From Perna viridis (lineage: Eukaryota): a stretch of DNA of 64,000 nucleotides. Positions 14,489 to 47,407 of this stretch are shown here, one piece after another. The DNA is taken from assembly GCA_037379345.1 (NCBI GenBank), contig CM074512.1, positions 35,712,001 through 35,776,000 of the forward strand. Direction: 5' to 3'. The position numbers and the translations under genes are program-made. Under the pieces are notes generated by a model. That model did not search any database and was not told the origin of the DNA. It saw nothing but the letters and a program-made list of their open reading frames with translations. Every line of letters starts with the position of its first letter. The stretch's first letter is position 1.

Positions 14489-15204
14489 GTATTATCTTTA
14501 AACAATCCTAATTTCGGGGATTTGATACATCGCATCTACCCCAAAGAACTTCAGATAAAGGATACTACAAACACTGTGAAGTCAGCCTCATAACTAGACC
14601 TAAACTTAGAAATTGATGGTAAAGAAAAACTATCGACCAAACTTTACAACAAACGTGACGACTTTTCATCAGTGGCAACATCCCTTCAGCACCTGCGTAT
14701 GGAGTGTTCATATCACAACTCATATGTTATGCCAGAGCTTGCCGAAACTACGCTGACTTTTTGTATCGCGCTAGCAAACTCTAACAAATAGGCTTCTGGA
14801 ACAGGGTTACGTTGCTACCAGATTGAAGTCATCACTACAGAAGTTTTATGGTCGTCATCATGAACTCGTGGATCGTTATGGTGTATCCATCTGCACCATG
14901 GAAACTGATTTATTCAATGGGCCATAGTTTTCCTTTCCTCGTTTGTTTACCCCGGACATGACTTTTTATGAGCAACTCGGTGAGTGTTTCTAAAAAAGCA
15001 GAGGACGCTTACCCTAACGCTGCACCTGGTTCATGCTCCCAGTTTTTAGTGGAGTCTGAGTTGCTCATTTGCTTTTGTTACTTTGTATGTATGATTTTTA
15101 GTTACTTCATGTTCTTTGTTGTGTGTCGGTTTTCCATGACTGGTCTTTGTCCCTGGATAACATTCTTTTGATTACTGCTATAACCTTGGTTCCCTTGATT
15201 ACTC
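14489..15204 (+). mobile_element. 5'-truncated Penelope-like retroelement (probably Naiad-type): decayed RT C-terminus plus 3'UTR
   Basis: Manual translation across a stop and frameshifts gives VLSLNNPNFGDLIHRIYPKELQIKDTTNTVKSAS*LDLNLEIDGKEKLSTKLYNKRDDFS / SGNIPSAPAYGVFISQLICYARACRNYADFLYRA / LTNRLLEQGYVATRLKSSLQKFYGRHHELVDRYGVSICTMETDLFNGP* (TAG 14925-14927). This is typical PLE RT post-YxDD and thumb sequence, with no C-terminal GIY-YIG domain. Confidence 0.85.
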
Positions 15205-21814: not shown

Positions 21815-24800
21815 TTCTGCATACATTGGAAATTTCAGATGAATGGAATGATGGACAGAATAACAAACAAATGGATGAACAATGCAATTCCAAAATACTT
21901 CCTACTAGTATAATTTTCAGGTTTCAATTGCAGGTGGGTTGGTGGGTGAGAGTATAGATAAATATGCCCCTCCCCAAAGAGACACACCATGTTTCTATTT
22001 TTCAAACTAAGATGCAACAAAAGTATTTATTGTGTGTATTCAGAAAATAAACTTAACTTGGTTTTCATTTACATTGTGTATGATTATCATTTATAAATGT
22101 ACAAAACCTTAAAGTTTGGTAAGGCCACACAAAATTATTCAAAGAAAAACCACCAAAAAAAAACAGTAATTAATCATTAACTGAGAGCAGAAATCAACAT
22201 CTAGTATGTCTAGTTCTTAGAAACACCAAAGCAATGGCTAATAATAATAAACTCTTGCAACAGGCACTCTCTTTTTGAAGCATCCAATATGTTTTAGCGA
22301 GCACTGCATTGATTACTAACAAGGAAGCCAGGATGAAGTACCAATACTTATTAGGAGGAAGCAAGGGCATTCTCATTAAGCCTGCACTTGAAACAGAAAA
22401 TAAAAAATACTTCCTAACGCAACTGTGCTAATACAAAAATATGTCAAGCTTCAGCGGGAACTATTTCCCCCTCGTGTTGTTAATTCAAATAGTCTTCAAT
22501 GTTTCAGTTTCCTTATAGCATTAAAATCCTAATCTTCCATTTCCTAAGAAAAAGCTCTTTCTTTATTAACTTCTATTCAAAATTAAAGAGGAAGGATTTT
22601 GAAAACAGACAATTTTCCTTAGTATTTAAAGAAATACTAACTTCTTTCAGTTTTGATAGACTTGATAAGGAAGTTTTTCGTTTACCTATCAGATATAGGT
22701 CAAAATAGTGATAAATCTGTCCTAGCTAGTTCTTAAAATAAGGAAATAACATTAACAATCTATGCACTTTTGTTTGTGTAAAAAAAATGTCAGGTTCTAT
22801 TAATTGTATAAAACCATGTCTGTATTAAAATAGCATCCATTATCACAAATGTACAAATTTCTTGTTCAAAGCTAAAGCTTTCCAAAGCTACAGTGTAAAG
22901 TCACATAATAATGAAGCACAATGCAAAGAGGAGTTTTGTAATTCTTTGAAGAAACGGGACATAATTCAAAAAGCTTTTCAAGACCAAATATAAGGCTTGT
23001 TAGAGCAATCTTGTTTAATGGCTTGTGAAAAAAACATGACACATACTCAACAGAAAAAAAAACTTTCCAGTCTCAACCAGTTCTAAAATAAATAAAGAAG
23101 ATGGAAAACAAATCATAGTTTTCATTACCATATCTGCAAAGGATGTATATCAAGAAATACTTCAAACTGAAGATGCAACTATTCTTTTTCTTATTGTGTT
23201 TAATGTGTTTGCATTTTTGTTTACAAGTTTTTACTACTGAAAAACACATGGTAATCATTCAGGAGATAGCAAGAGGTATAAGTGAGCACCATTACCCCCC
23301 AAAAAAACTTAAAAATACTGAACGAAAACGCATATACCAGTATATAAATCATACCAAAAAGAGCATTAACCCTCCTAATGTAGATGACCAACTACATTGG
23401 AAATAAGTCTAAAGCCTTGGGACAATAAAACCCTATACAAATCAGTGTCAATATGTAAACATTGAAGAAATTAATATGACAGATATAGAAAAATATTAAT
23501 ATATATCATATAAATATTACATTACTAGTCACAATATTATGTATTCAAATAAAACTAGTGTGTCAATACAGAAAAGGTTTGATTTATGATATTAGTAAAG
23601 GTTAAAATAAACTATTATGTTTGTCTGGTTGTCTAGGTAGTCCTAAGCTTATTTAGACAGATGCTACATTTCCTTTGTTACAAAGTTATGTTTAGCTGTA
23701 GGAAAGAGTAACTTCTTTCTTCTGGAGTAGGTACATGTAGCTCTGATCATGATCCATGGGTGGCCTCCCTTGAGGACATTGTTAATAGGATTTTCAAAAA
23801 TAGGTTAAAACAACAAATGGTTAAATGGTAGATATAGTACTTAGTTTCTGAGACTGATGAGACAAAAGCTCTACTTATTGACAAGAAAATTTGGGAAAAA
23901 GGGGAGACAGATAAAACTTCAACAAATGTGTGTTTTGGTGATCAAGAATTAATTGAAACTGTGATAAGTGCAGACATGGAAATTTTCTAGTAAAACACAA
24001 CTTCTTCCTTGTTCTTTAAAATGGGAATTGGGACTCTTTTAAAAGAAATCAGGGAACATAAAATATGAATGAGGACAAAAGTATCTAGAGTTAACTAAAT
24101 GTTAACAGATATAAAATAATAATTTTTCAATTTGTACAAGTAAAAGGTGACTTAACAGAACTAATAAAAATAGAACGAAGAAAAATCACAGAAAAAGTAC
24201 CCTTCCAGCTCCTCCATACCAGAATATACCTAGTACTAGTGGATACTTTATCAAAATGAATGTTTTTTGTAATGTATCCAAACTTGAAAAGGAAAGCTAT
24301 TTCTGTGAAGATGAATTATGATTAATTACTGGGCTTGTAGGCTTAAAGGGGAGAGTGATACATTTTCCCAAAGCTTCTTGTTAAATTCAACAATTACCAA
24401 GTGATGTGATGCCGCTAAATGGGCTTGAACCTTTCAATACCATGCTTAGCATTTAGAATCATTATAAGGAACTTGTGGATTGTTGTTTATAATCAATCTT
24501 TCAATCTATGGAACAGGCTAAATTCAAACAGACAAACACAGAGAAATACATGGATAGATCTCTATAATGTAAAATCTAATAAGAGTTTTGAAAAGATAAT
24601 AATTTTTGCCATGTGAATCCTCCCATTCACTTTTATGATCAAACAAATGGTATGGCGTCAAAACAAAAGTGCTTTAGTACATGTAAACAAATTTACATAA
24701 ATAGCTGATTAAACAATCCCCAAATAACATGTATGACTCGACATTTTGAATTGCATAAATGCTACCAAGATACACAGTCAAAACATGTAGGCATGTAGTT

Positions 24801-26359
24801 GCTACAGAGCCAGATAATTAAATCATAACAGAATAACTTCTAGGACAGTGAAATTATTTCATTACAGAATGGTTATTATAATGCCTAATACAGATTAATT
24901 TTGTTCATTATGGTACGTCAATAAAGCACAAATAAAGAGAACATGCTGTCAAATAAATCGTAAAACGGTAGGAGACCTTTTTAGTAGCATACAGTTTATG
25001 TCGCCTCCGTTACATCAATTCCGGGAAATTATTAAATTTGTTGGCTGTTTTATTTCTAAAATACATTTATGGAACAAAGTGTCTCAAGTTTTATTCAATA
25101 AAAAGACTAAAATAAAATATTCAGTAAGTTGGGCTCTAAATCCAATTTGTGACGGATATCAGACTTCTCATTACCACAGCAGACGTCTGCAGGGGTGAAA
25201 ATTGTAGAAATGGAAGGACTATTGTAGTTTATTGCACAGACAGGGCTGTATGTATTGACCGAATTAGGTTCATTTCATTAATGCGAATAGAACAATAAAA
25301 ACAATAAGCAGACTTTTTTTTATTGACATGAACAAATTAGATTCAACTTGAGCCTTAAGGTTTCCAGAATTTCTGAAATAAAGGTTTTTTTTATAACAAT
25401 AGCTTCTACGAACTTCTAGAAAAGAGTCATTCTTAACTGTCACTTACACAGAATATCTCTTTTTCACCATTTTAAACAGAGAAGACTTGGAAGTTGCCAG
25501 GAATGAGATAGAATCAATTAAGCTGCACATAATTAATAATGGGTAAAATTTTCATCTTCCGAAATTAGTACCAAAATGACTTCAAGGTGCAGGCAGACAT
25601 GCACACTCTTATAATTAAGCATAAATCCATGTAATGTAGAATGCTATTTGTTAACTGAGACCTTGACAAACAAAAACAAAATTTGTAATTAACCAACTTA
25701 ATCAAGAAACTCATTATAAGTACAGTATGAAAACATGTGACATCGTTTTAGCACTGCATGTATGTGACCTCAACATCTGCTAGTAGGAAGACATTATTAC
25801 CCTCCATATTATGCCAAGTTCCTGCAGTCGAAGCTTAGCAATTTTTTAGCACGATATTTCAGTATGACATAATGAACAAAGTATATTTCTGTCTCACTGT
25901 CACTGACTTAGTAATTGTATAATATTGGAAACACATCTTCATATTTTAAGTTAGGTCCAGTTTACATGTTTCATGAACAATTGCACTAACCATAATACAG
26001 AATCAATAAGTTTGGAAAGTACATACATTAATGGAGCCTAGACTCTTTCTACCTGAAGATTTAGGTCTACCTTTAGACCTTATGAAAGTAAACTAATAGT
26101 AAAGTTATAAACCAGTTATATAAAGAAAGTTCTTTAAAAAAATTACTTGAGAGACTACATAATGAAAGGTCAATGATGAAAATAGCATTAACTTGGAAGA
26201 TAATTGCAAAATTCTGAAGAACCCAAATTTTAACATGGAAGTAATAAAGCATAAAATGATTTTCATATACAAGTCTACAGAGACATCTTCCACAAACAAC
26301 TCAAGTAACGTTCAAAACTAAAACTATAGTTAAAATAGAGCTAAATATTTGGCACTCAC

Positions 26360-26587
26360 CTTAATGGAATCAAAACAGGCTGTAACTCGGCCATTCTGAA
26401 CTTCAACGTGGGGTGGTGGGTGAGCAAACTTGCACTCTGTGTCCGGCCGCGTACATTTGTTTCTCTGAAACTCTCGGCAAACTTCTAACGTCAGCCATCG
26501 AGAGTCTTTAACATTGTTTGGAAGGATAGTTCCAATTGCCGGACTGACGCCAGCTAAATTGACCATTGTATTATTCACCATGGCCAT
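26360..26587 (-). CDS. mbl: Muscleblind-like (MBNL) RNA-binding splicing regulator, first coding exon (76 codons; ZnF1 plus start of ZnF2)
   Basis: Translation MAMVNN...[51 protein letters not shown] has the MBNL signature [10 protein letters not shown], a C-x7-C-x6-C-x3-H finger and NGRVxACFDSxK. It ends at a canonical phase-0 donor AAG|GTGAGT (26360/26359), the intron position known from fly mbl and vertebrate MBNL. Confidence 0.97.
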
Positions 26588-26918
26588 AACACTTTAATAT
26601 GAAATAACGTGGTATGAAAAAAAAAAGTTCTTCTTCTTGGTAGAAAGTAACGTTGAAAGACTTAGGGTAAACTCACACCTACAAATATCATTAAAAAACT
26701 ACTCAACACTTAGTACAAAAAATTCTTAAAATTTGATCACAAGAACTTCCACATGTGTTTAACACAAAAGATCACAGGTCAGGTTTCTATGGTAACGGTT
26801 TATAGCACTATCCAATATGGTTTCTATGGAGATGATTGGTTTTGGTTACTATGGCAATGACTATGGTTTATGGTTTTATGAAATGATGTTGTTCTGTCTC
26901 CAACAGTTACTTGTTTCT
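26588..26918 (-). other. mbl: Predicted 5'UTR part (331 nt) of the mbl start-codon exon; whole exon 26360-26918, 559 nt
   Basis: Strong acceptor on the minus strand, GTCTTTTTTTTTCTATTTTCAG|AGAAAC (AG at 26920-26919). A long UTR and the ATG in the same internal exon match MBNL gene architecture. No transcript evidence is available. Confidence 0.7.
26783..26858. promoter_or_regulatory. Cluster of three RFX X-box-like motifs in the mbl 5'UTR exon
   Basis: GTTTCTATGGTAAC (26783-26796, full match to RTHNYYWTRRNRAC), GTTTCTATGGAGAT (26820-26833) and GTTACTATGGCAAT (26845-26858). Confidence 0.45.
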
Positions 26919-29900
26919 CTGAAAATAGAAAAAAAAAGACACATATGAAATAATCTTTCCTGGCAAAAAAATATAAGTAAAGTATTAAACAAATACAGCC
27001 ATCTATTATATAGATACAAACCAGTTTTCCTAAAATTCAAAATATCTCCAAAACTTGATATATCATACATATCCATAGGATACTGACCTTCTCTCTCAAG
27101 AACAACTTCAGAACAGAGTTCAAATTGCAAACAACCATATTTATAAAGTATGAGGAAAATAAAACCAACGAAAATAGTCTCTGTTCAGGTATTTCCATCC
27201 AACACCCATTAATATTGTAGTATGAATAATGATGACCCAAATAAAACAGTACAATAGCGATCACTGCTACTACCAACAGGACATCATGTTACACAAGGAA
27301 GTTAAGAATGATGTTTAACTTTAAAAGTTACAAAAACACATTGACTTCACTTCCTCTTTCTTCAAGTAGTCATATTCAGACATGAAGTACACAAATAAAA
27401 GAAGATTAATGTGGTCTTTGTTTCAGTTTCTAGGAATTCTATACATGTAAGACCTTGCATATCACCTTAAGATTTTATCATGTCATACAATATCACCAAA
27501 AATATATCTATTTTCTAAGTACAATTTATAACGAAAATATTGAGTAAAAAAGAACCCAAGAAACAATCTAAACTCACCAATAAAGTAAGAAATAAAAAAG
27601 AGATCCTGAACTATGATTCACAAAAAAAAGTAACAACTTTCATTCAATGGAACTGAAGTTTTGAACTGCATCAACACGCAAGCACAATGAGAAACTGTTG
27701 ATAACAATAAAAACGAAACTCTCTTTCTTGGCAAAAGACGCCATATGCAAAGACATCCAGAGAATGCAAGAAGACAATGATATCATCAAACATTTCCTTG
27801 TAGCTCCCAGAACAATGGATAGTTTCTGTCAACTTTCATTAGTGAAAGAAGTTGAGCAACATCTGATAAAAATAGGTAGGAGAAATGTAACTGTCTGTTA
27901 CCAACACCATACATCATTCCAAACCAACCCAAGCTTATTATCTCCCTTGATGGACGAGTTCTTTTGTGGGAGAGATAAACAACTCCTAATTGAAATCAAA
28001 TGGCATATAAATCTGGTGAATATAAGCAAAAGGGATTCAAATCTCAAATCTCAAATGTAATTGAACATCTTCTCAAGTATTTTATTTTATATATATATAT
28101 GTAACTCTTGAAATACTCACATTTTTTGTCTATTTCACATAAATCATTTTGAATAAGATTAAAATCCATACCTGAACTTAAAATCTTGGCGCACCTTGAT
28201 ATGTCATGCTTGATACTCATGTAGCATGTTCCCAATTTGCATATAAATTTTCCTTAAAACAAACATAACAATCTATTTCAACATTACCTTGCGGTTTTAG
28301 AGAAAAGCCTTTTTTACGTACACATTACATAATTTCACCAACTGCAATCATCAATTCCGAAACAACAAACATGTGTCATCCTCATAACAAAGGAACCAGA
28401 GAAAAGAAAAACGAAAAGATGAGTCACGTCTCAAATTATCTTCCCTTGATCCGTCACCACCATTTCCGAGAAACTACCAATATTCAACAAGTGGGCTGCC
28501 TCTTTTTAGACATTGGTTCAATCTGTTTTAAATCAAAATGCACCACTGCTGGACTATACTGAAAGATCGATAAAACATGCATAGCTTGACAAGCTTTGTA
28601 ACTTACTTGCCACTGAGGTAGAAAACCTGTTACGAAAAATTTGCATATTTTATTCATAAAACCACCCTTTTCTTAAATCACTAATATGTGACTTCCCTTA
28701 ACTTCTTGTAATTCTTTTACTGCTATGATCAATGAGAAATTGAGGGATAATCTCTGGATAGATGAAAGTGTCAACAGGTTTTCTCTTAACATCGTATTAA
28801 GGTTTGTATTACCAGTAGGTTTACTGACATATCAACTATAAATAGATATAACACTAAGGTTTTTTTTTCATAAGAAGTTCTGGTATCTTAACTCTTTCAT
28901 ACATGTGATATTTTATAGGTGAAGATTAACAGCTTATTTTAACTTAAAAAATGATCTCCAGTAATTTCTATCTAAATAATACATTTGCAGAGCTCAAATC
29001 AAAATACATTATACTGGTGAAAAAACTGGGGATAACAGATTCTGAAAAGAAATAAATGTCCTTTAATACAAATTTTACAACAAAAATTTGCTGGACGAGA
29101 ATAGCATAATAGTTTAGGTCACCTCACATGGAATTTACACAAAAAAGATTTCATCATGCTGGATTAAGTTCAAAGTTCAGAAATAGGGAACTACTCCTAT
29201 TCCAAAAGAGTTTTTAAGGAATTTTATCTCTATCAAACCTGATAAAAATTCATTATTTGGGTTAATTAATGATGTTTCCAGAGACTACAGGGAAAAAAAA
29301 CATCACACTTAGTACTACTTAAAATGCATTAAAAACTATTAAAGAACAGCTAATGTTAGCAACTTCAATTTCAGAGTAAATAAACATGTCATTATACTGT
29401 TAGGTTTACTTAATTAAATGTTAGGAACTGCCTGCTCTGACAATTAGAATATTGAACTTATATGGCAATACAAAACAGCAGGTTACTTTAGTCTTCAACA
29501 TTAACACAAATTTTACTGAGTAAACCAAAGAACATTTTATATCTGTTTCAACCCATCTCTGTAAATTAAAAAAAAAAAACCCAAGTGAAATAACAAAAAT
29601 TGCCCAAAGAAAGGTCAATTTTGACAGGTTTTACTTTGCATTTCCAGCATCTGTACACACAATGCAAATAACAAAACTTCTGATTCAAGGCCAAGAAAAC
29701 ATCAGACAGTGACAATGTTACCAATAGACAAGATCCTTTGCCTTAAACAAATTGTCTCAGCTATTTACGGTCAAAGATGACATAGTCTGAAGCTAGACCT
29801 CATTATAAGTCAAAGGTTAGGGAGAAAAAACACACACTTTAAGGAACACCAGAAAAACTGGAATTAATTTCTAGAATTTAACACAACATTTTATTGAACC

Positions 29901-29943
29901 AGAAGTGACATATGTTAAAACAGGTGGATTTATTGCATTACGG

Positions 29944-30091
29944 AGGCTGCAAACAGACCAACAGATATACATGGAAATCCTGAAACCCCTCAAGGCTGCA
30001 AACAGACAAATAGATATACATGGAAGTCCTGAAACTCCTCAAGGCTGCAAGCAGACCAATAGATATGCATGGAAGTCCTGAAACCCCTCAA
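29944..30091. repeat. 49-bp tandem repeat, 3 copies
   Basis: AGGCTGCAA at 29944, 29993 and 30042, each followed by ...AGATATACATGGAARTCCTGAAACYCCTCA. Confidence 0.95.
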
Positions 30092-35500: not shown

Positions 35501-38500
35501 GAAATAGAACATTAATTTCTTAATTTACATCTTCCTTGATGATCGATTTCTACGTGTCGTCATGTAAATGACTAAGAATTTTACCTTTCGTTTCACCTGT
35601 GACAATGGATACATAAACATATCCTTTCGTAACAAGCAGCCATGTTTTCTGATGTCTTTATGAAAAAATAAATCCAATTCGCTATCAGGATATATCTTCG
35701 ACTAAAGGAAAATCCCTCAGAAACAAAATGGCTTCCGTCACAGATATAAATCACAACCACAAACTTTGAGATTTAAATTAAAAAAAGTCTCGACCCTGAA
35801 ATTTACATTTTGTGTCCCACTCATCTCATCTCGCATAATAAACCACTCCCTCATTCAAAGGTAAACATTTTCAGCGACTAAACAAACACCGTTTACAATT
35901 TTATCTTTATATTTCCTGTTTGAAGAGCTCGTCCACATTTAGTCAAGGAACAGAATCAGGTAAAAATTGTCTACCTGTGCAATTCTATGGACTATTAATA
36001 GACCCTAATGCCAGACAATTTTTTATCCACAGGGAGTTCATTTAAGGTTATGCAGGATTAACTCTCCTAACCCCAAATGACCTTTCCTTTTGAATATTTC
36101 ATGTTGTGCAATTTCAATAATACACACATCAATTATTAATGATAAATATTTGTTTTCCATTGATCAGCTGCATGGTTGGTAGAATGATTTACTGTATTGG
36201 ACAGAATTCCTTTGGATTAAAGTAGATACAGGCTTTCAAGAAGGTAAAAGGAGAATCTGTCTAATCAAACCGACACTTGTATAAACTGGCACTGTTTGTA
36301 GGTCTTCAATTCATTACAATTACTTCTCAACCTATGGATTTATCAAACCAAATTTGGTGGATCCATGATGTTTTAAATCAAACTGGTTCATCTGTTATAA
36401 AATAATGTCAGGGGCGTCCTATACATGTATTTCGAAACTTGAGGTCACAAAGTGTATAACCATAAAAAAAGGGGATGTTTCTGGTACTAATACTTCATAA
36501 CTTTATCATTTAAGTAAAGTAATACATTTAATACCATTCAATAAGACAACACAAATAAAAGAGGGGAAAATATCTTTGTATGATAGCCTTTCTCAGTTTC
36601 TGATGCAACACACTCCCAACCTATGAGAAAATTAAACAAATGAAATTAACTCATCCCATCACGTCAACATTTAACAAACACGCCAAACAGAGCAAGTGCA
36701 TGTTTGGCACAACCTAAAAATTGACTCTGATATTAGTGGATATCACCGGATATTTATCAACGAAATATCGCTTGTGATCGTCCTTGAGAGTTATGACTCA
36801 TGTCTTAAAGTGATTTTTAAAGTTGATAAAAGTGCACAATACTTGTTCATATCCATTTACAGATAACTATGAATAAGGCACATTTAAAGCTAAGTTTATT
36901 CAAATCTAATTTAATTTGATAGGCTTACAAATAATGCGAACAAAATTGTATAAATTAAATGTAATGTAGGAGATATTTATAACACTATATTTTCAGTATC
37001 TATACTTTCAGTTTTCAAAACGATTATCAATTAAAAATCAAACTCCTTACAATCTGATATTAAATAAATTTGAATTATTTTATATTTTCACGCAAACACA
37101 TTTACAATAACTTACTGCAAAAAAGTCCATTAATTTATCCCAAATAAAATCAAAGTGTCCTCATATGAACAATCACTAATGCTGTTAAGCTGCAGCTTGG
37201 AAATCTCCTTATTGCAGTATAACAGTATTATAGCCACAGAAAAAAAAAACATATTTTATTCTTGTGAGTGATTCATGGTCTAAAATTTTCTGCATTTTTT
37301 CCACCATCAGGTGACACGTTCCTTCTTTTAATATGGTTGCAAGCTGTTGAAGAGTTTGTATTGATAGTTTATATCAAAGTATAATTGAACATGGACAGTC
37401 GCTGAATCAACACTATCTTTATAGTCCATCAACAGAAATTGTGAACTGATCTTTTGTCTGGCTGCACATGTGATCAATAACACATATGTATATTGGGGAA
37501 AAAAAACCACGATTTCCTATTAGGGAGCTATATCCCCAGGCTTGTATTCATAACTCTGCACTTTAATAACCCTTTATTGCTTATCAATATAAATATTAAA
37601 AGCAATACTACAGTCTGTCTCCATCCTATACATTAGTCAACTACATTACAAGTCCACAAAAGGCAAAATACATATTTAATGCAGATATAAATGTATAACT
37701 TTTATAATACATTTGTATTTATCTGTAGTCAACATTTATACATTGTCTGCAAACTAAACATGGAACAACATAAATGCACATCATATCTGTTTAAATTTTT
37801 TTTTTTACATTCTACCAACACGAAAGTTGTTTCAACTGCCTTTACAAGGACTGTCCCCCTTTTTTTCAACCAATGCACCTTGCACATGAGTAGTTAAGTA
37901 CACCCTTATATCGTATTAACACAAAATAGGGGGGAGGTCAATTAAATTTGGTGTTACCTTTCGGGAAACATCTGTCTTCAACAAATCAGTTTCCTATTAT
38001 GTTAATGCACATCCCTCTGATCAACACTTATAGATATTGAATATTCAAGTTGGATCTTTTGTTTGGCTGTAGGAGTATTGATAAAAAAAGATCATGTAGG
38101 TGTGAAATGCATCTGCAAAATCAATCTTTTTTTTATATTTCAATTGATGAAATTTTGGGCAAATTCAAATTGTAGTAGATGAGACATTTACTTAACTGGC
38201 ATTTTGTTCTGGTCTTTTAAAGCATCTTTTTAAAAATAAATCTTATCAAAATTTCCATTTAAAACAAATTTCTTTAAAGGACTTTATTGTACTAGATATG
38301 AAGTATCTCAGGAAGGAAAAACATAAATGTCAGCATTTTCCCCAGATTACCTAAAAATTTCTAAAATTACCTACCTGATTGATATACATCAAATAGGTAT
38401 AAAACAGAAATAAAGTTGAACATAACAAATGCACCAAGAGCATTGCCACATTAGCTATTTCCAGCTTTACAAATGAATCAAAAAGGGGACAATTTTTTGC

Positions 38501-46222: not shown

Positions 46223-46729
46223 TTTGTTTGTTTGTTGGGGTTTAACGTCCGAGCAGCGATATTTCAGCTATATTCAGACAATAAACATGAAATGGATGAT
46301 ATAATGAACATGAAATGAAAAAAAAAGGATGGGTCACAAGGATAATAGGGTCGACAAATTTTTATTGCCACTGGAAAAAGGGGGGATGGGTAAGATAGGG
46401 CAATTTAGCCTCCTGTGGCGGAGCGCAAAGGTTCCTACTCCTATCGAATACCACAGCAGGGTTCTTTAATGTGCGAGGAACGTGGCATCTTTCCCATCAC
46501 GGTGCACCACTATGGTTTGCGGTCAGGTTTTCCGTATTATAGCCTGACAACCCCAGCATGTAACACGCCAGGGGTACCCCATTCCACCATCTGGGGCACA
46601 CATCCCAGTTGCTCTGTGGGCAGAGCGCCTAGCCCCCGGCTAGGTTTCTGAGCACTATTCAGTTGCCTTATACCACAAGCTTAGCGCTGCTGCAGGTCTA
46701 TTCTTTTATCACCCGGACCTGCACGGGGG
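46223..46729 (-). mobile_element. Full-length SINE-like retroposon, copy A (Meta-domain-like core, (AAAC)n tail)
   Basis: 11-bp TSD TTCAAGGAAGA at 46212-46222 and 46730-46740, and a (TTTG)n tail on the plus strand. It is the reverse complement of 59263-59777 over its full length. Confidence 0.92.
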
Positions 46730-47135: not shown

Positions 47136-47407
47136 AGAGTAATCAAGGGAACCAAGGTTACAGCGGTTATCAAAAGAATGTAATCCAGGGACAAAGACCA
47201 GACATGGAAAACAGACATTCACAACAAAGAACATAAAGTAACTAAAATCATACATACAAAGTAACAAAAGTAAATGAGCAACTCGGACTCCACTAAAAAC
47301 TGGGAGCATGGACCAGGTGCACCGGTAGGGTAAGCGTCCCCTGCTTTTCTAGAAACATCCGCCAAGTTGTTCATAAAAAGTCAAGTCCGGGGTAGACAAA
47401 CGAGGAA
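47136..47407 (-). mobile_element. 3'UTR fragment of the same Penelope-like element
   Basis: Reverse complement aligns to ~14935-15204 and shares the 3' terminus CCCTTGATTACTC. Confidence 0.92.

What the first reader, a model, noticed from the sequence alone, without database searches (positions are those of the whole stretch)
26360..26918. Candidate molluscan circMbl: a 559-nt start-codon exon that would encode a 79-aa single-finger protein when back-spliced
Seen: an isolated exon with a strong acceptor (26919) and donor (26359), carrying 5'UTR, ATG and ZnF1, between tens of kb of non-coding DNA. Joining the donor to the exon's own acceptor reads ...TCC ATT AAG|AGA AAC AAG TAA, i.e. the 76 native residues plus RNK and a stop. 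Established: the equivalent exon forms circMbl in Drosophila and circMBNL1 in mammals, as part of an MBL autoregulatory loop, and fly circMbl is reported to be translated with a stop just past the junction. Inference: the circuit may extend to lophotrochozoans. Caveat: an early stop is likely by chance in AT-rich UTR.
Basis: partly seen in the sequence, partly recalled or inferred. Interest (0 to 1): 0.8.

Follow-up and report, generated by a model that had tools for sequence, protein, structure and literature searches.

The report
Mussel muscleblind start exon, circle unseen
This is the real, expressed start-codon exon of a mussel muscleblind gene, built like the exon that forms a circular RNA in flies and mammals, but the four RNA data sets I could read show only ordinary linear splicing and no circle.

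Summary
On the minus strand, 26918..26360 is a 559-nt exon (cag|AGAAAC…ATTAAG|gtgagt). It carries a 331-nt 5'UTR, the ATG (26587) and 76 codons: muscleblind zinc finger 1 plus the first Cys of finger 2 (MBNL1 5u6h, E 6.6e-27). Reads confirm both splice sites. The donor joins the finger-2 exon 29.9 kb downstream. The acceptor takes at least four alternative upstream exons, three of them placed 8.7, 42 and 45 kb away, so it is an internal exon. Joining donor to own acceptor does read RNK-stop (79 aa).

The circle itself was not seen:
- One stranded raw RNA run had 86 linear-junction reads and no back-splice joint.
- Three contig sets had none either.
- In one contig set the outflow at the donor (100.3 spliced + 5.3 intron) accounts for the exon depth (103.8).

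Library types are unknown, so this bounds the circle at roughly under 10% of linear in these samples. It does not exclude it.

MBNL (YGCY) motifs are not enriched in the exon or its flanks. The only flanking inverted repeat is a distant pair of a high-copy element.

New hint: an in-frame stop 2–8 codons (mostly codon 4) past the predicted acceptor recurs in seven bivalves. It is suggestive (p≈0.02–0.05) and confounded by a uORF. The candidate remains plausible but unproven.

The parts
26360..26918 (-). 559-nt internal exon of the muscleblind gene: 331-nt 5'UTR, then the ATG and 76 codons
   Evidence: Sequence. RNA depth 33-116 against 0-7 in the flanks, with spliced loose ends at both edges in 4 runs.
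26919..26945 (-). Acceptor AG (26920-26919) with its polypyrimidine tract
   Evidence: Reads join at least four different upstream exons to 26918. It is the top-scoring acceptor in the 5' region and its position is conserved in L003, L004 and L007.
26354..26359 (-). Donor gtgagt, phase 0 after ...DSIK
   Evidence: 23 reads and 3 contigs join it to the ZnF2 exon.
26585..26587 (-). Start codon of muscleblind (MAMVNN...)
   Evidence: The N-terminus MAMVN is shared by mollusc, annelid and arthropod hits.
26420..26479 (-). Zinc finger 1, [20 protein letters not shown]
26907..26909 (-). TAA, fourth codon after a phase-0 entry at the acceptor. It would end a back-spliced ORF, and it also ends a uORF coming from upstream exon c.
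   Evidence: The aligned codon is TAG, TAA, TGA and TGA in L003, L004, L007 and L018.
35585..35616 (-). 3' end of alternative upstream exon c (…GAAACGAAAG|gtaaaa). Its 5' end was not determined.
   Evidence: The X1 contig joins it to 26918. Exact match in the window, sequence.
27722..28024 (-). Conserved block in the upstream intron, 0.8-1.1 kb from the acceptor, weakly transcribed
   Evidence: blastn gives 69-77% identity to L003 and L004 in collinear position. Contigs of depth 5-7 lie here in X1, X3 and X13.
47137..47407 (.). Upstream arm of the only inverted repeat pair that brackets the exon (20.2 kb away)
   Evidence: 272 nt, 91%. It is a copy of a repeat with over 3000 candidate copies in the genome.
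14935..15204 (.). Downstream arm of that inverted pair (11.2 kb from the donor)

Best explanation
The interval is the constitutive 5'UTR/start-codon/ZnF1 exon of a mytilid-type mussel muscleblind (MBNL) gene. It is an internal exon. Several alternative 5' exons, 8.7 to 45 kb upstream, are spliced to its acceptor at 26918. Its phase-0 donor at 26359 is spliced across a 29.9-kb intron to the exon that completes zinc finger 2. In every RNA data set that could be read, the molecules carrying it are linear mRNA or pre-mRNA. If the exon also back-splices, the circle is below about a tenth of the linear form in these libraries. Shown: exon identity, both splice sites, the linear partners and the expression. 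Inferred: that linear splicing is its main fate in the animal, because tissue and library type are unknown.
For: Exon anatomy and homology; in run X21 (stranded raw reads) 34+29 reads join upstream exons at the acceptor, 23 join the next exon at the donor, and table 5 lists no joints; about 82 reads run on unlike and the three linear classes hold 86, so nothing is left over. Also: the X1 contig (941 nt) runs exon c - this exon - ZnF2 exon. In X3 the exon contig has depth 103.8, against 100.3 for the donor-junction contig plus 5.3 for intron read-through, so the exon-to-next-exon ratio is about 1.03, whereas over 70% of the fly exon-2 signal is circular. Partner exons were located in the genome. 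No ...SIKRNK ORF is among 584 relatives or in the cluster of the window's own ORF. YGCY density in the exon and in 0.2-2 kb flanks is at or below the window background, and the strand total equals the Markov expectation (430 observed, 437 expected).
Against: Library type and tissue of all four runs are unknown. X21 has intron cover of only about 1% of exon cover, which suggests poly(A) selection, and that depletes circles. Logan contigs drop rare branches. The architecture (orthologous exon, 559 nt, long flanking introns) is the kind that circularises in flies and mammals. A phase-0 stop right behind the acceptor recurs across bivalves, which a purely linear exon does not obviously need.
Confidence: 0.8

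Rival explanations
1. A true circMbl orthologue: the exon back-splices in some tissues (nerve, muscle), promoted by its long flanking introns, and the runs read here missed it because they are poly(A)-selected or from other tissues.
For: The exon is orthologous to the circularising second exon of fly mbl and mammalian MBNL1/2. It is internal, with flanking introns of 8.7-45 kb and 29.9 kb. One 272-nt, 91% inverted repeat pair brackets it. Its presence in both ecdysozoans and vertebrates makes an ancestral origin parsimonious (inference).
Against: No back-splice joints in 4 runs from 4 studies. Depth flows balance without a circle in X3. There are no YGCY clusters in the exon or flanks. The inverted pair is 20 and 11 kb away and made of young copies of a repeat with over 3000 copies. 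The library searched holds no paper on a lophotrochozoan circMbl.
Confidence: 0.35
2. The circle exists and is translated from the shared ATG into a 79-aa single-finger peptide that ends at the TAA at 26909..26907. The conserved phase-0 stop behind the acceptor is its footprint.
For: With the top-scoring acceptor in each species, the first phase-0 stop is at codon 4, 4, 3, 4, 2, 8, 4 in seven bivalves, against mostly 6-38 in the other two phases. Codon 4 is TAA/TAG/TAA/TGA/TGA in mytilids, an oyster and a clam, while the nine bases before it differ. 5'UTR length modulo 3 varies (1, 2, 0, 2), so the stop is not tied to the main ORF's frame. Fly circMbl shows the same feature (PMC5387669).
Against: The circle itself is unseen. 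Chance gives a stop within 4 codons in 13-42% of pseudo-acceptors. The lineage-level tests reach only p about 0.02-0.05, and the acceptors are predicted, not verified, outside the window. The same TAA ends a uORF from exon c. Pamudurti et al. state that such conservation cannot separate a circRNA ORF from a uORF. Two upstream ATGs lie in the exon's own UTR (read).
Confidence: 0.07
3. The early phase-0 stop is kept because it terminates upstream ORFs that run in from alternative 5' exons (translational control of linear mbl mRNA), with no circle involved.
For: Exon c carries ATG…MFMYPLSQVKRK| open to its 3' end in phase 0, so the uORF ends at this TAA. Pamudurti et al. found higher stop conservation where a uORF is possible.
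Against: The ATGs of exons a and b enter in another phase and stop 14 codons in. The 5' exons are several and alternative, so a phase shared across species is not expected. Conservation of exon c could not be checked because the other species' loci are too short.
Confidence: 0.25

Closest known systems
Drosophila circMbl (second exon of mbl)
   Same: The host exon is orthologous: 5'UTR + ATG + ZnF1, the same ...DSIK| phase-0 donor, an internal position behind alternative 5' exons, very long flanking introns, and a stop a few codons past the would-be junction.
   Different: In flies the circle is the main product of the exon (over 70% of its signal), and MBL sites lie in the flanking introns and in the circle (PMC9352392). 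Here no junction read was found, exon and next-exon depths are equal, and YGCY is not enriched.
Mammalian circMBNL1 / circMBNL2
   Same: Same gene family and the same start-codon exon; finger 1 is near-identical (MBNL1 5u6h, E 6.6e-27).
   Different: Mammalian circularisation is documented. It is unproven here. ZnF2 here has the fly-like C-x6-C spacing (GKCQRKDPPCKYLH).
Ordinary 5'UTR/start-codon exon of a muscleblind gene
   Same: Everything actually shown here: linear splicing to upstream 5' exons and to the ZnF2 exon, and expression in 20 runs from 9 studies.
   Different: Nothing shown departs from it, apart from the recurrent phase-0 stop behind the acceptor, which remains unexplained.

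Membership tests
Muscleblind/MBNL gene | N-terminal CCCH finger C-x7-C-x6-C-x3-H with the WLxLEVCREF context | tested here: met
   [30 protein letters not shown]; MBNL1 5u6h E 6.6e-27.
Muscleblind/MBNL gene | A second finger completes the ZnF1-2 tandem in the next exon | tested here: met
   Reads join the donor to GKCQRKDPPCKYLHPPQHL…, located 29.9 kb downstream behind tactttcag|.
circMbl / circMBNL1-type circRNA | Host exon is the internal exon carrying 5'UTR and start codon, orthologous to fly exon 2 | tested here: met
   (at least four upstream exons joined). (DS[IL]K| donor shared across protostomes).
circMbl / circMBNL1-type circRNA | Back-splice junction (donor 26360 joined to acceptor 26918) present in RNA | tested here: inconclusive
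   No joints in X21 raw reads (86 linear-junction reads) or in X1, X3, X13 contigs. This bounds it at about under 10% of linear there. Library type and tissue are unknown.
circMbl / circMBNL1-type circRNA | Excess of exon signal over the downstream exon | tested here: not met
   X3: exon contig 103.8 against donor-junction contig 100.3.
circMbl / circMBNL1-type circRNA | Clusters of MBL-binding (YGCY) sites in the flanking introns and in the exon | tested here: not met
   4 YGCY in the exon (background 3.7). In flanks of 200-2000 nt every upstream count is below the background mean and downstream counts reach at best the top 15% of background windows (3 YGCY in the first 200 nt). The motif preference of the mollusc protein is assumed, not measured.
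circMbl / circMBNL1-type circRNA | Long flanking introns | tested here: met
   8.7, about 42 and 45.2 kb upstream (exons c, b, a); 29.9 kb downstream.
circMbl / circMBNL1-type circRNA | RNase R resistance; dependence of the circle on MBL level | not testable with these tools
   Needs bench work.
Translated circRNA (ribo-circRNA, Pamudurti 2017) | Shares the host ATG; stop shortly after the junction, conserved | tested here: inconclusive
   The stop at codon 4 is confirmed. It recurs in 7 bivalves, but chance is 13-42% per species, there is a uORF confound, and acceptors outside the window are predicted only.
Translated circRNA (ribo-circRNA, Pamudurti 2017) | Ribosome footprints or peptide across the junction | not testable with these tools
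   No Ribo-seq or MS data within reach.

The most novel reading that the evidence does not exclude
The start-codon exon of muscleblind circularises in molluscs as in flies and mammals, and the phase-0 stop kept 2-8 codons behind the acceptor across bivalves (TAA/TAG/TGA at one aligned codon in mussels, an oyster and a clam) is maintained because the circle is translated into a single-finger MBL peptide of about 80 aa. That would make it a circRNA-encoded protein dating back to the bilaterian ancestor.
Probability: 0.08. Interest if true: 0.7.

Novelty: new member of a known kind. Interest (0 to 1): 0.3.

Why it matters
circMbl is the textbook case of a circular RNA that competes with linear splicing of its own host gene and is reported to be translated. 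It is known from flies and mammals only. A third, lophotrochozoan instance would date the circuit to the bilaterian ancestor. A stop codon conserved relative to the splice junction rather than to the main ORF would be rare comparative support for circRNA translation. What is shown here is only the orthologous exon with the right architecture, spliced linearly. That is expected for a conserved gene, so the value lies in a sharpened, cheap test rather than in a discovery.

Tried and rejected
1. 'This is the first transcribed exon': rejected. At least four different upstream exons are spliced to 26918. Three were located: exon c in the window at 35585, exon b at C2:35781023 and exon a at C2:35784099. 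Exon a is itself internal. A fourth variant (d, from X13) was not found in the window and I did not search the genome for it.
2. 'The real acceptor lies elsewhere': rejected. The two loose-end places, 26918 and 26920, are one acceptor. Exons b, c and d end in AG, which mimics the intronic ag.
3. MBL-site clusters near the exon: none. The excess of YGCY on the minus strand over the plus strand is compositional (observed 430, Markov expectation 437).
4. Flanking inverted repeats: none within 10 kb at 40 nt or more. blastn of the whole introns gives one distant pair made of a high-copy repeat.
5. Short ORFs in the protein collection that end in a back-splice tail: none for mussels or oysters. 97 of 120 are intron read-throughs.
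6. A post hoc motif GTRR-N(2-9)-TKGGA behind the acceptor recurs in mussels, an oyster, Mactra, a snail and L020. It is absent in L018, where only the stop is kept, so I do not claim a motif.
7. Rfam on 24000-30000: nothing.
8. Literature on circMbl in molluscs or other lophotrochozoans: nothing in the library.
9. RNA editing at 26489: rejected. It is 27/54 reads in X21 and fixed in X13, and it is a synonymous third base of a Thr codon, so it is an allele.
Left out by the operators' rule: the joined (back-spliced or spliced) sequence, the 79-aa product and the junction string were never built or sent to any search tool. Exons were handled one by one, by reference.

Full report
**What is there.**
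- On the minus strand the window reads ttttctattttcag|AGAAACAAGTAAC… at 26918 and …GATTCCATTAAG|gtgagt after 26360. This is a 559-nt exon.
- A 331-nt AT-rich leader precedes ATG 26587. Then 76 codons run flush to the donor, so the exon ends in phase 0.
- The peptide MAMVNN…[50 protein letters not shown] contains the only CCCH finger in the 64 kb.
- It hits Pfam zf-CCCH_10 (2.7e-11) and aligns to the ZnF1-2 structures of human MBNL1 and MBNL2 (5u6h 6.6e-27, 3d2n 2.6e-26, 2rpp 1.2e-24). It ends just after the first Cys of finger 2.
- No ORF of 130 aa or more exists anywhere in the window.
- Joining the donor to the exon's own first bases reads AGA AAC AAG TAA.

**The organism.**
- The closest relatives of the peptide are Logan ORFs at 92-93% identity and Mytilus galloprovincialis muscleblind at 92%. 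The oyster is at 78%.
- The genome has 723 Mb in 46 contigs, and the window is C2:35712001-35776000.
- So this is a mytilid-type mussel other than Mytilus.

**Expression and splicing (runs chosen).**
- I laid one raw, stranded RNA-seq run (X21) and the Logan contigs of three older runs from other studies (X1, X3, X13) on 25000-28400.
- Depth is 33-72 (X21), 28 (X1), 87-123 (X3) and 115 (X13) inside the exon, against 0-7 in the flanks. All X21 pairs have the first mate on +, which fits an RNA from the minus strand.
- At the donor, 23 reads and one contig in each contig run continue with the same sequence. It maps once in the genome, at C2:35708459, behind tactttcag|. It reads GKCQRKDPPCKYLHPPQHLREQLLQNGRNN…, the rest of finger 2 with the fly-like C-x6-C spacing. 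The downstream intron is 29.9 kb.
- At the acceptor, reads continue into at least four different upstream exons:
  - a: …CCAACTAACCCAATATAT| (34 reads), at C2:35784099, 45.2 kb upstream. It is itself an internal exon of about 71-73 nt.
  - b: …CAGCCATGGCGAG| (29 reads), at C2:35781023, about 42 kb upstream.
  - c: …GGTGAAACGAAAG| (X1), in the window at 35585, 8.7 kb upstream, followed by gtaaaa.
  - d: a variant seen in X13, not found in the window.

**The test for the circle.**
- Read laying lists reads or contigs that 'go back' as joints. It listed none in any run, at a threshold of 2 reads in 100 and 3 reads.
- In X21 about 82 reads run on for 20 or more unlike letters, and the three linear classes hold 86. 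Nothing is left over.
- Fewer than 3 back-splice reads against 63 acceptor-side linear reads puts the circle below roughly a tenth of linear at 95% confidence (my Poisson estimate).
- In X3 the assembly graph breaks at both exon ends, which gives separate depths. The exon is 103.8, the exon-to-ZnF2 junction contig is 100.3 and the intron read-through contig is 5.3. The outflow at the donor is fully accounted for, and the ratio of exon to next exon is about 1.03. In fly heads more than 70% of the exon-2 signal is circular (PMC9352392).
- The X1 contig runs exon c - this exon - next exon as one linear piece.
- Limits of this test:
  - Library types and tissues are not on record.
  - X21 has very little intron signal (about 1%), which suggests poly(A) selection.
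  - Contigs drop rare branches.
  - Human-like reads are filtered silently.
- The result is therefore 'not seen, and bounded', not 'absent'.

**Indirect searches.**
- A word search with the 76-aa part (by reference) returned 584 relatives. Of the 120 listed, 97 continue after DS[IL]K with V, that is, read into the GT of the intron. Three continue with G[RK]C (spliced), three end there, and 17 continue in other ways in gene models.
- None from a mussel or oyster carries a back-splice tail. The cluster of the window's own read-through ORF holds only read-throughs.
- This is weak negative evidence. It does show that the phase-0 donor after DSIK is shared by molluscs, annelids and arthropods, so the exon is the structural equivalent of fly exon 2.

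**Features tied to circle formation.**
- Long flanking introns are present.
- MBL-binding motifs are not enriched:
  - The exon has 4 YGCY against a background of 3.7 per 559 nt, and its UTR part has 2.
  - For flanks of 200-2000 nt every upstream count is below the background mean, and downstream counts reach at best the top 15% of background windows.
  - UGCU, GCUU and YGCUKY behave the same way.
  - The minus-strand total (430) equals the first-order Markov expectation (437).
- No inverted repeat of 40 nt or more brackets the exon within 10 kb.
- Over the whole window, blastn finds one inverted pair, 47137-47407 against 14935-15204 (272 nt, 91%). Its arms lie 20.2 and 11.2 kb from the exon. 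Both arms are copies of an interspersed repeat with over 3000 candidate copies at 97-98% identity. That makes it a recent accident, and the upstream arm is absent from transcripts that start at exon c.

**Comparison across species.**
- I fetched the orthologous exon from:
  - two other mytilid-type species (L003, L004);
  - an oyster-type species (L007-L010);
  - three heterodont clams (L011, L012 = Mactra, L018);
  - a land snail (L014);
  - two annelid-type loci (L013, L015);
  - an unidentified spiralian (L020).
- The acceptor aligns in mussels and oyster.
- I took in each species the top-scoring acceptor 60-800 nt upstream of the ATG, with the scoring rule fixed beforehand. The first stop after a phase-0 entry then lies at codon 4, 4, 3, 4 (window, L003, L004, L007) and 2, 8, 4 (L011, L012, L018). 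The other two phases give mostly 6-38.
- Codon 4 is TAA, TAG, TAA, TGA, TGA in the three mussels, the oyster and L018, while the nine bases before it differ.
- 5'UTR length modulo 3 varies (1, 2, 0, 2), so the stop is fixed relative to the splice site, not to the main reading frame.
- Phase 0 has the earliest stop in 4 of 5 bivalve lineages (binomial p about 0.045). A stop by codon 4 in 4 of 5 lineages gives p about 0.02.
- Against this:
  - Pseudo-acceptors give a stop within four codons in 13-42% of cases (34% in the window).
  - Acceptors outside the window are predictions.
  - The snail and one annelid do not fit under the same rule.
  - In this mussel, exon c carries an ATG-initiated uORF (MFMYPLSQVKRK|) open in phase 0 that ends at the very same TAA. 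The ATGs of exons a and b enter in another phase.
- Pamudurti et al. met the same ambiguity in insects and could not separate a circle ORF from a uORF (PMC5387669). I rate this a real but modest hint.

**Literature.**
- circMbl arises from the second exon of fly mbl and from MBNL1/2 in mouse and human. It carries MBL sites, as do the mbl introns, and it is reported to be translated, with a stop used only in the circle (PMC9352392, PMC5387669).
- No paper in the library combines circMbl or muscleblind circRNA with molluscs, bivalves or other lophotrochozoans.

**Verdict.**
The exon is the right one, with the right position and architecture. The circle, the autoregulatory loop and the 79-aa product remain hypotheses.
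- The one direct test I could run came out negative within its limits, and the MBL-site signature is missing.
- My estimates: about one in three that an appreciable circle exists in some tissue, and under one in ten that it is translated.

Under the operators' rule I did not build or search any joined sequence: the back-splice junction string, the 79-aa product or a spliced mRNA. Frames across junctions were computed exon by exon.

Noticed in passing
window 27722-28024 (minus strand), upstream intron: A roughly 300-nt block 0.8-1.1 kb upstream of the acceptor is conserved at 69-77% in collinear position in two other mytilid-type species. Smaller blocks lie at 28513-28591 and 29296-29343, while the rest of the intron does not align. 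The block is covered by contigs of depth 5-7 in X1, X3 and X13, and in X1 it is the only intronic piece covered. It could be an intronic regulatory element, an unannotated exon or a small transcript. Rfam finds nothing.
   Followed up: partly
window 47137-47407 and 14935-15204: Two inverted copies (91% to each other) of a 271-nt interspersed repeat. The repeat has over 3000 candidate copies in the genome, many at 97-98% identity, so it is a young SINE- or MITE-like family.
   Followed up: partly
window 26816-26886 (5'UTR part of the exon): An imperfect tandem repeat (period 25, 2.7 copies) rich in CCATAG/ACCATA units. It is partly kept in the other mytilid-type species (…CCATAGCAAC…, …CCATAGAAAC…). 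Meaning unknown.
   Followed up: no
window 46395-46720: A roughly 330-nt island of 54% G+C in a 32% G+C intron, holding the densest YGCY cluster of the window (11 in 300 nt). It looks like a repeat or an RNA-derived element and was not identified.
   Followed up: no
window 26489; 26616-26630: A synonymous C/T polymorphism in a Thr codon of the exon: 27 of 54 reads in X21, fixed in the X13 contig. Length variation also occurs at the T10 run of the 5'UTR. These are alleles, not editing.
   Followed up: yes
L001 1501-1573 and L016 around 1501 (genome C2:35784099 and C2:35781023), beyond the window's end: Alternative 5' exons a and b of the muscleblind gene. Exon a is a 71-73-nt internal cassette (ttttag|…|gtaagt), so the promoter lies still further upstream. 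Exons b and d share the 3' end …CATGGCGAG.
   Followed up: partly
L013, L015 (annelid-type) and L007, L018: A shared heptamer, TGAAGAC or TGAAGTT, sits at or just behind the predicted acceptor in annelid-type loci (YAGAG TGAAGAC), the oyster (CAG TGAAGTT) and a clam (TAT TGAAGAC). Whether the TGA is in phase in annelids depends on which AG of AGAG is used.
   Followed up: no
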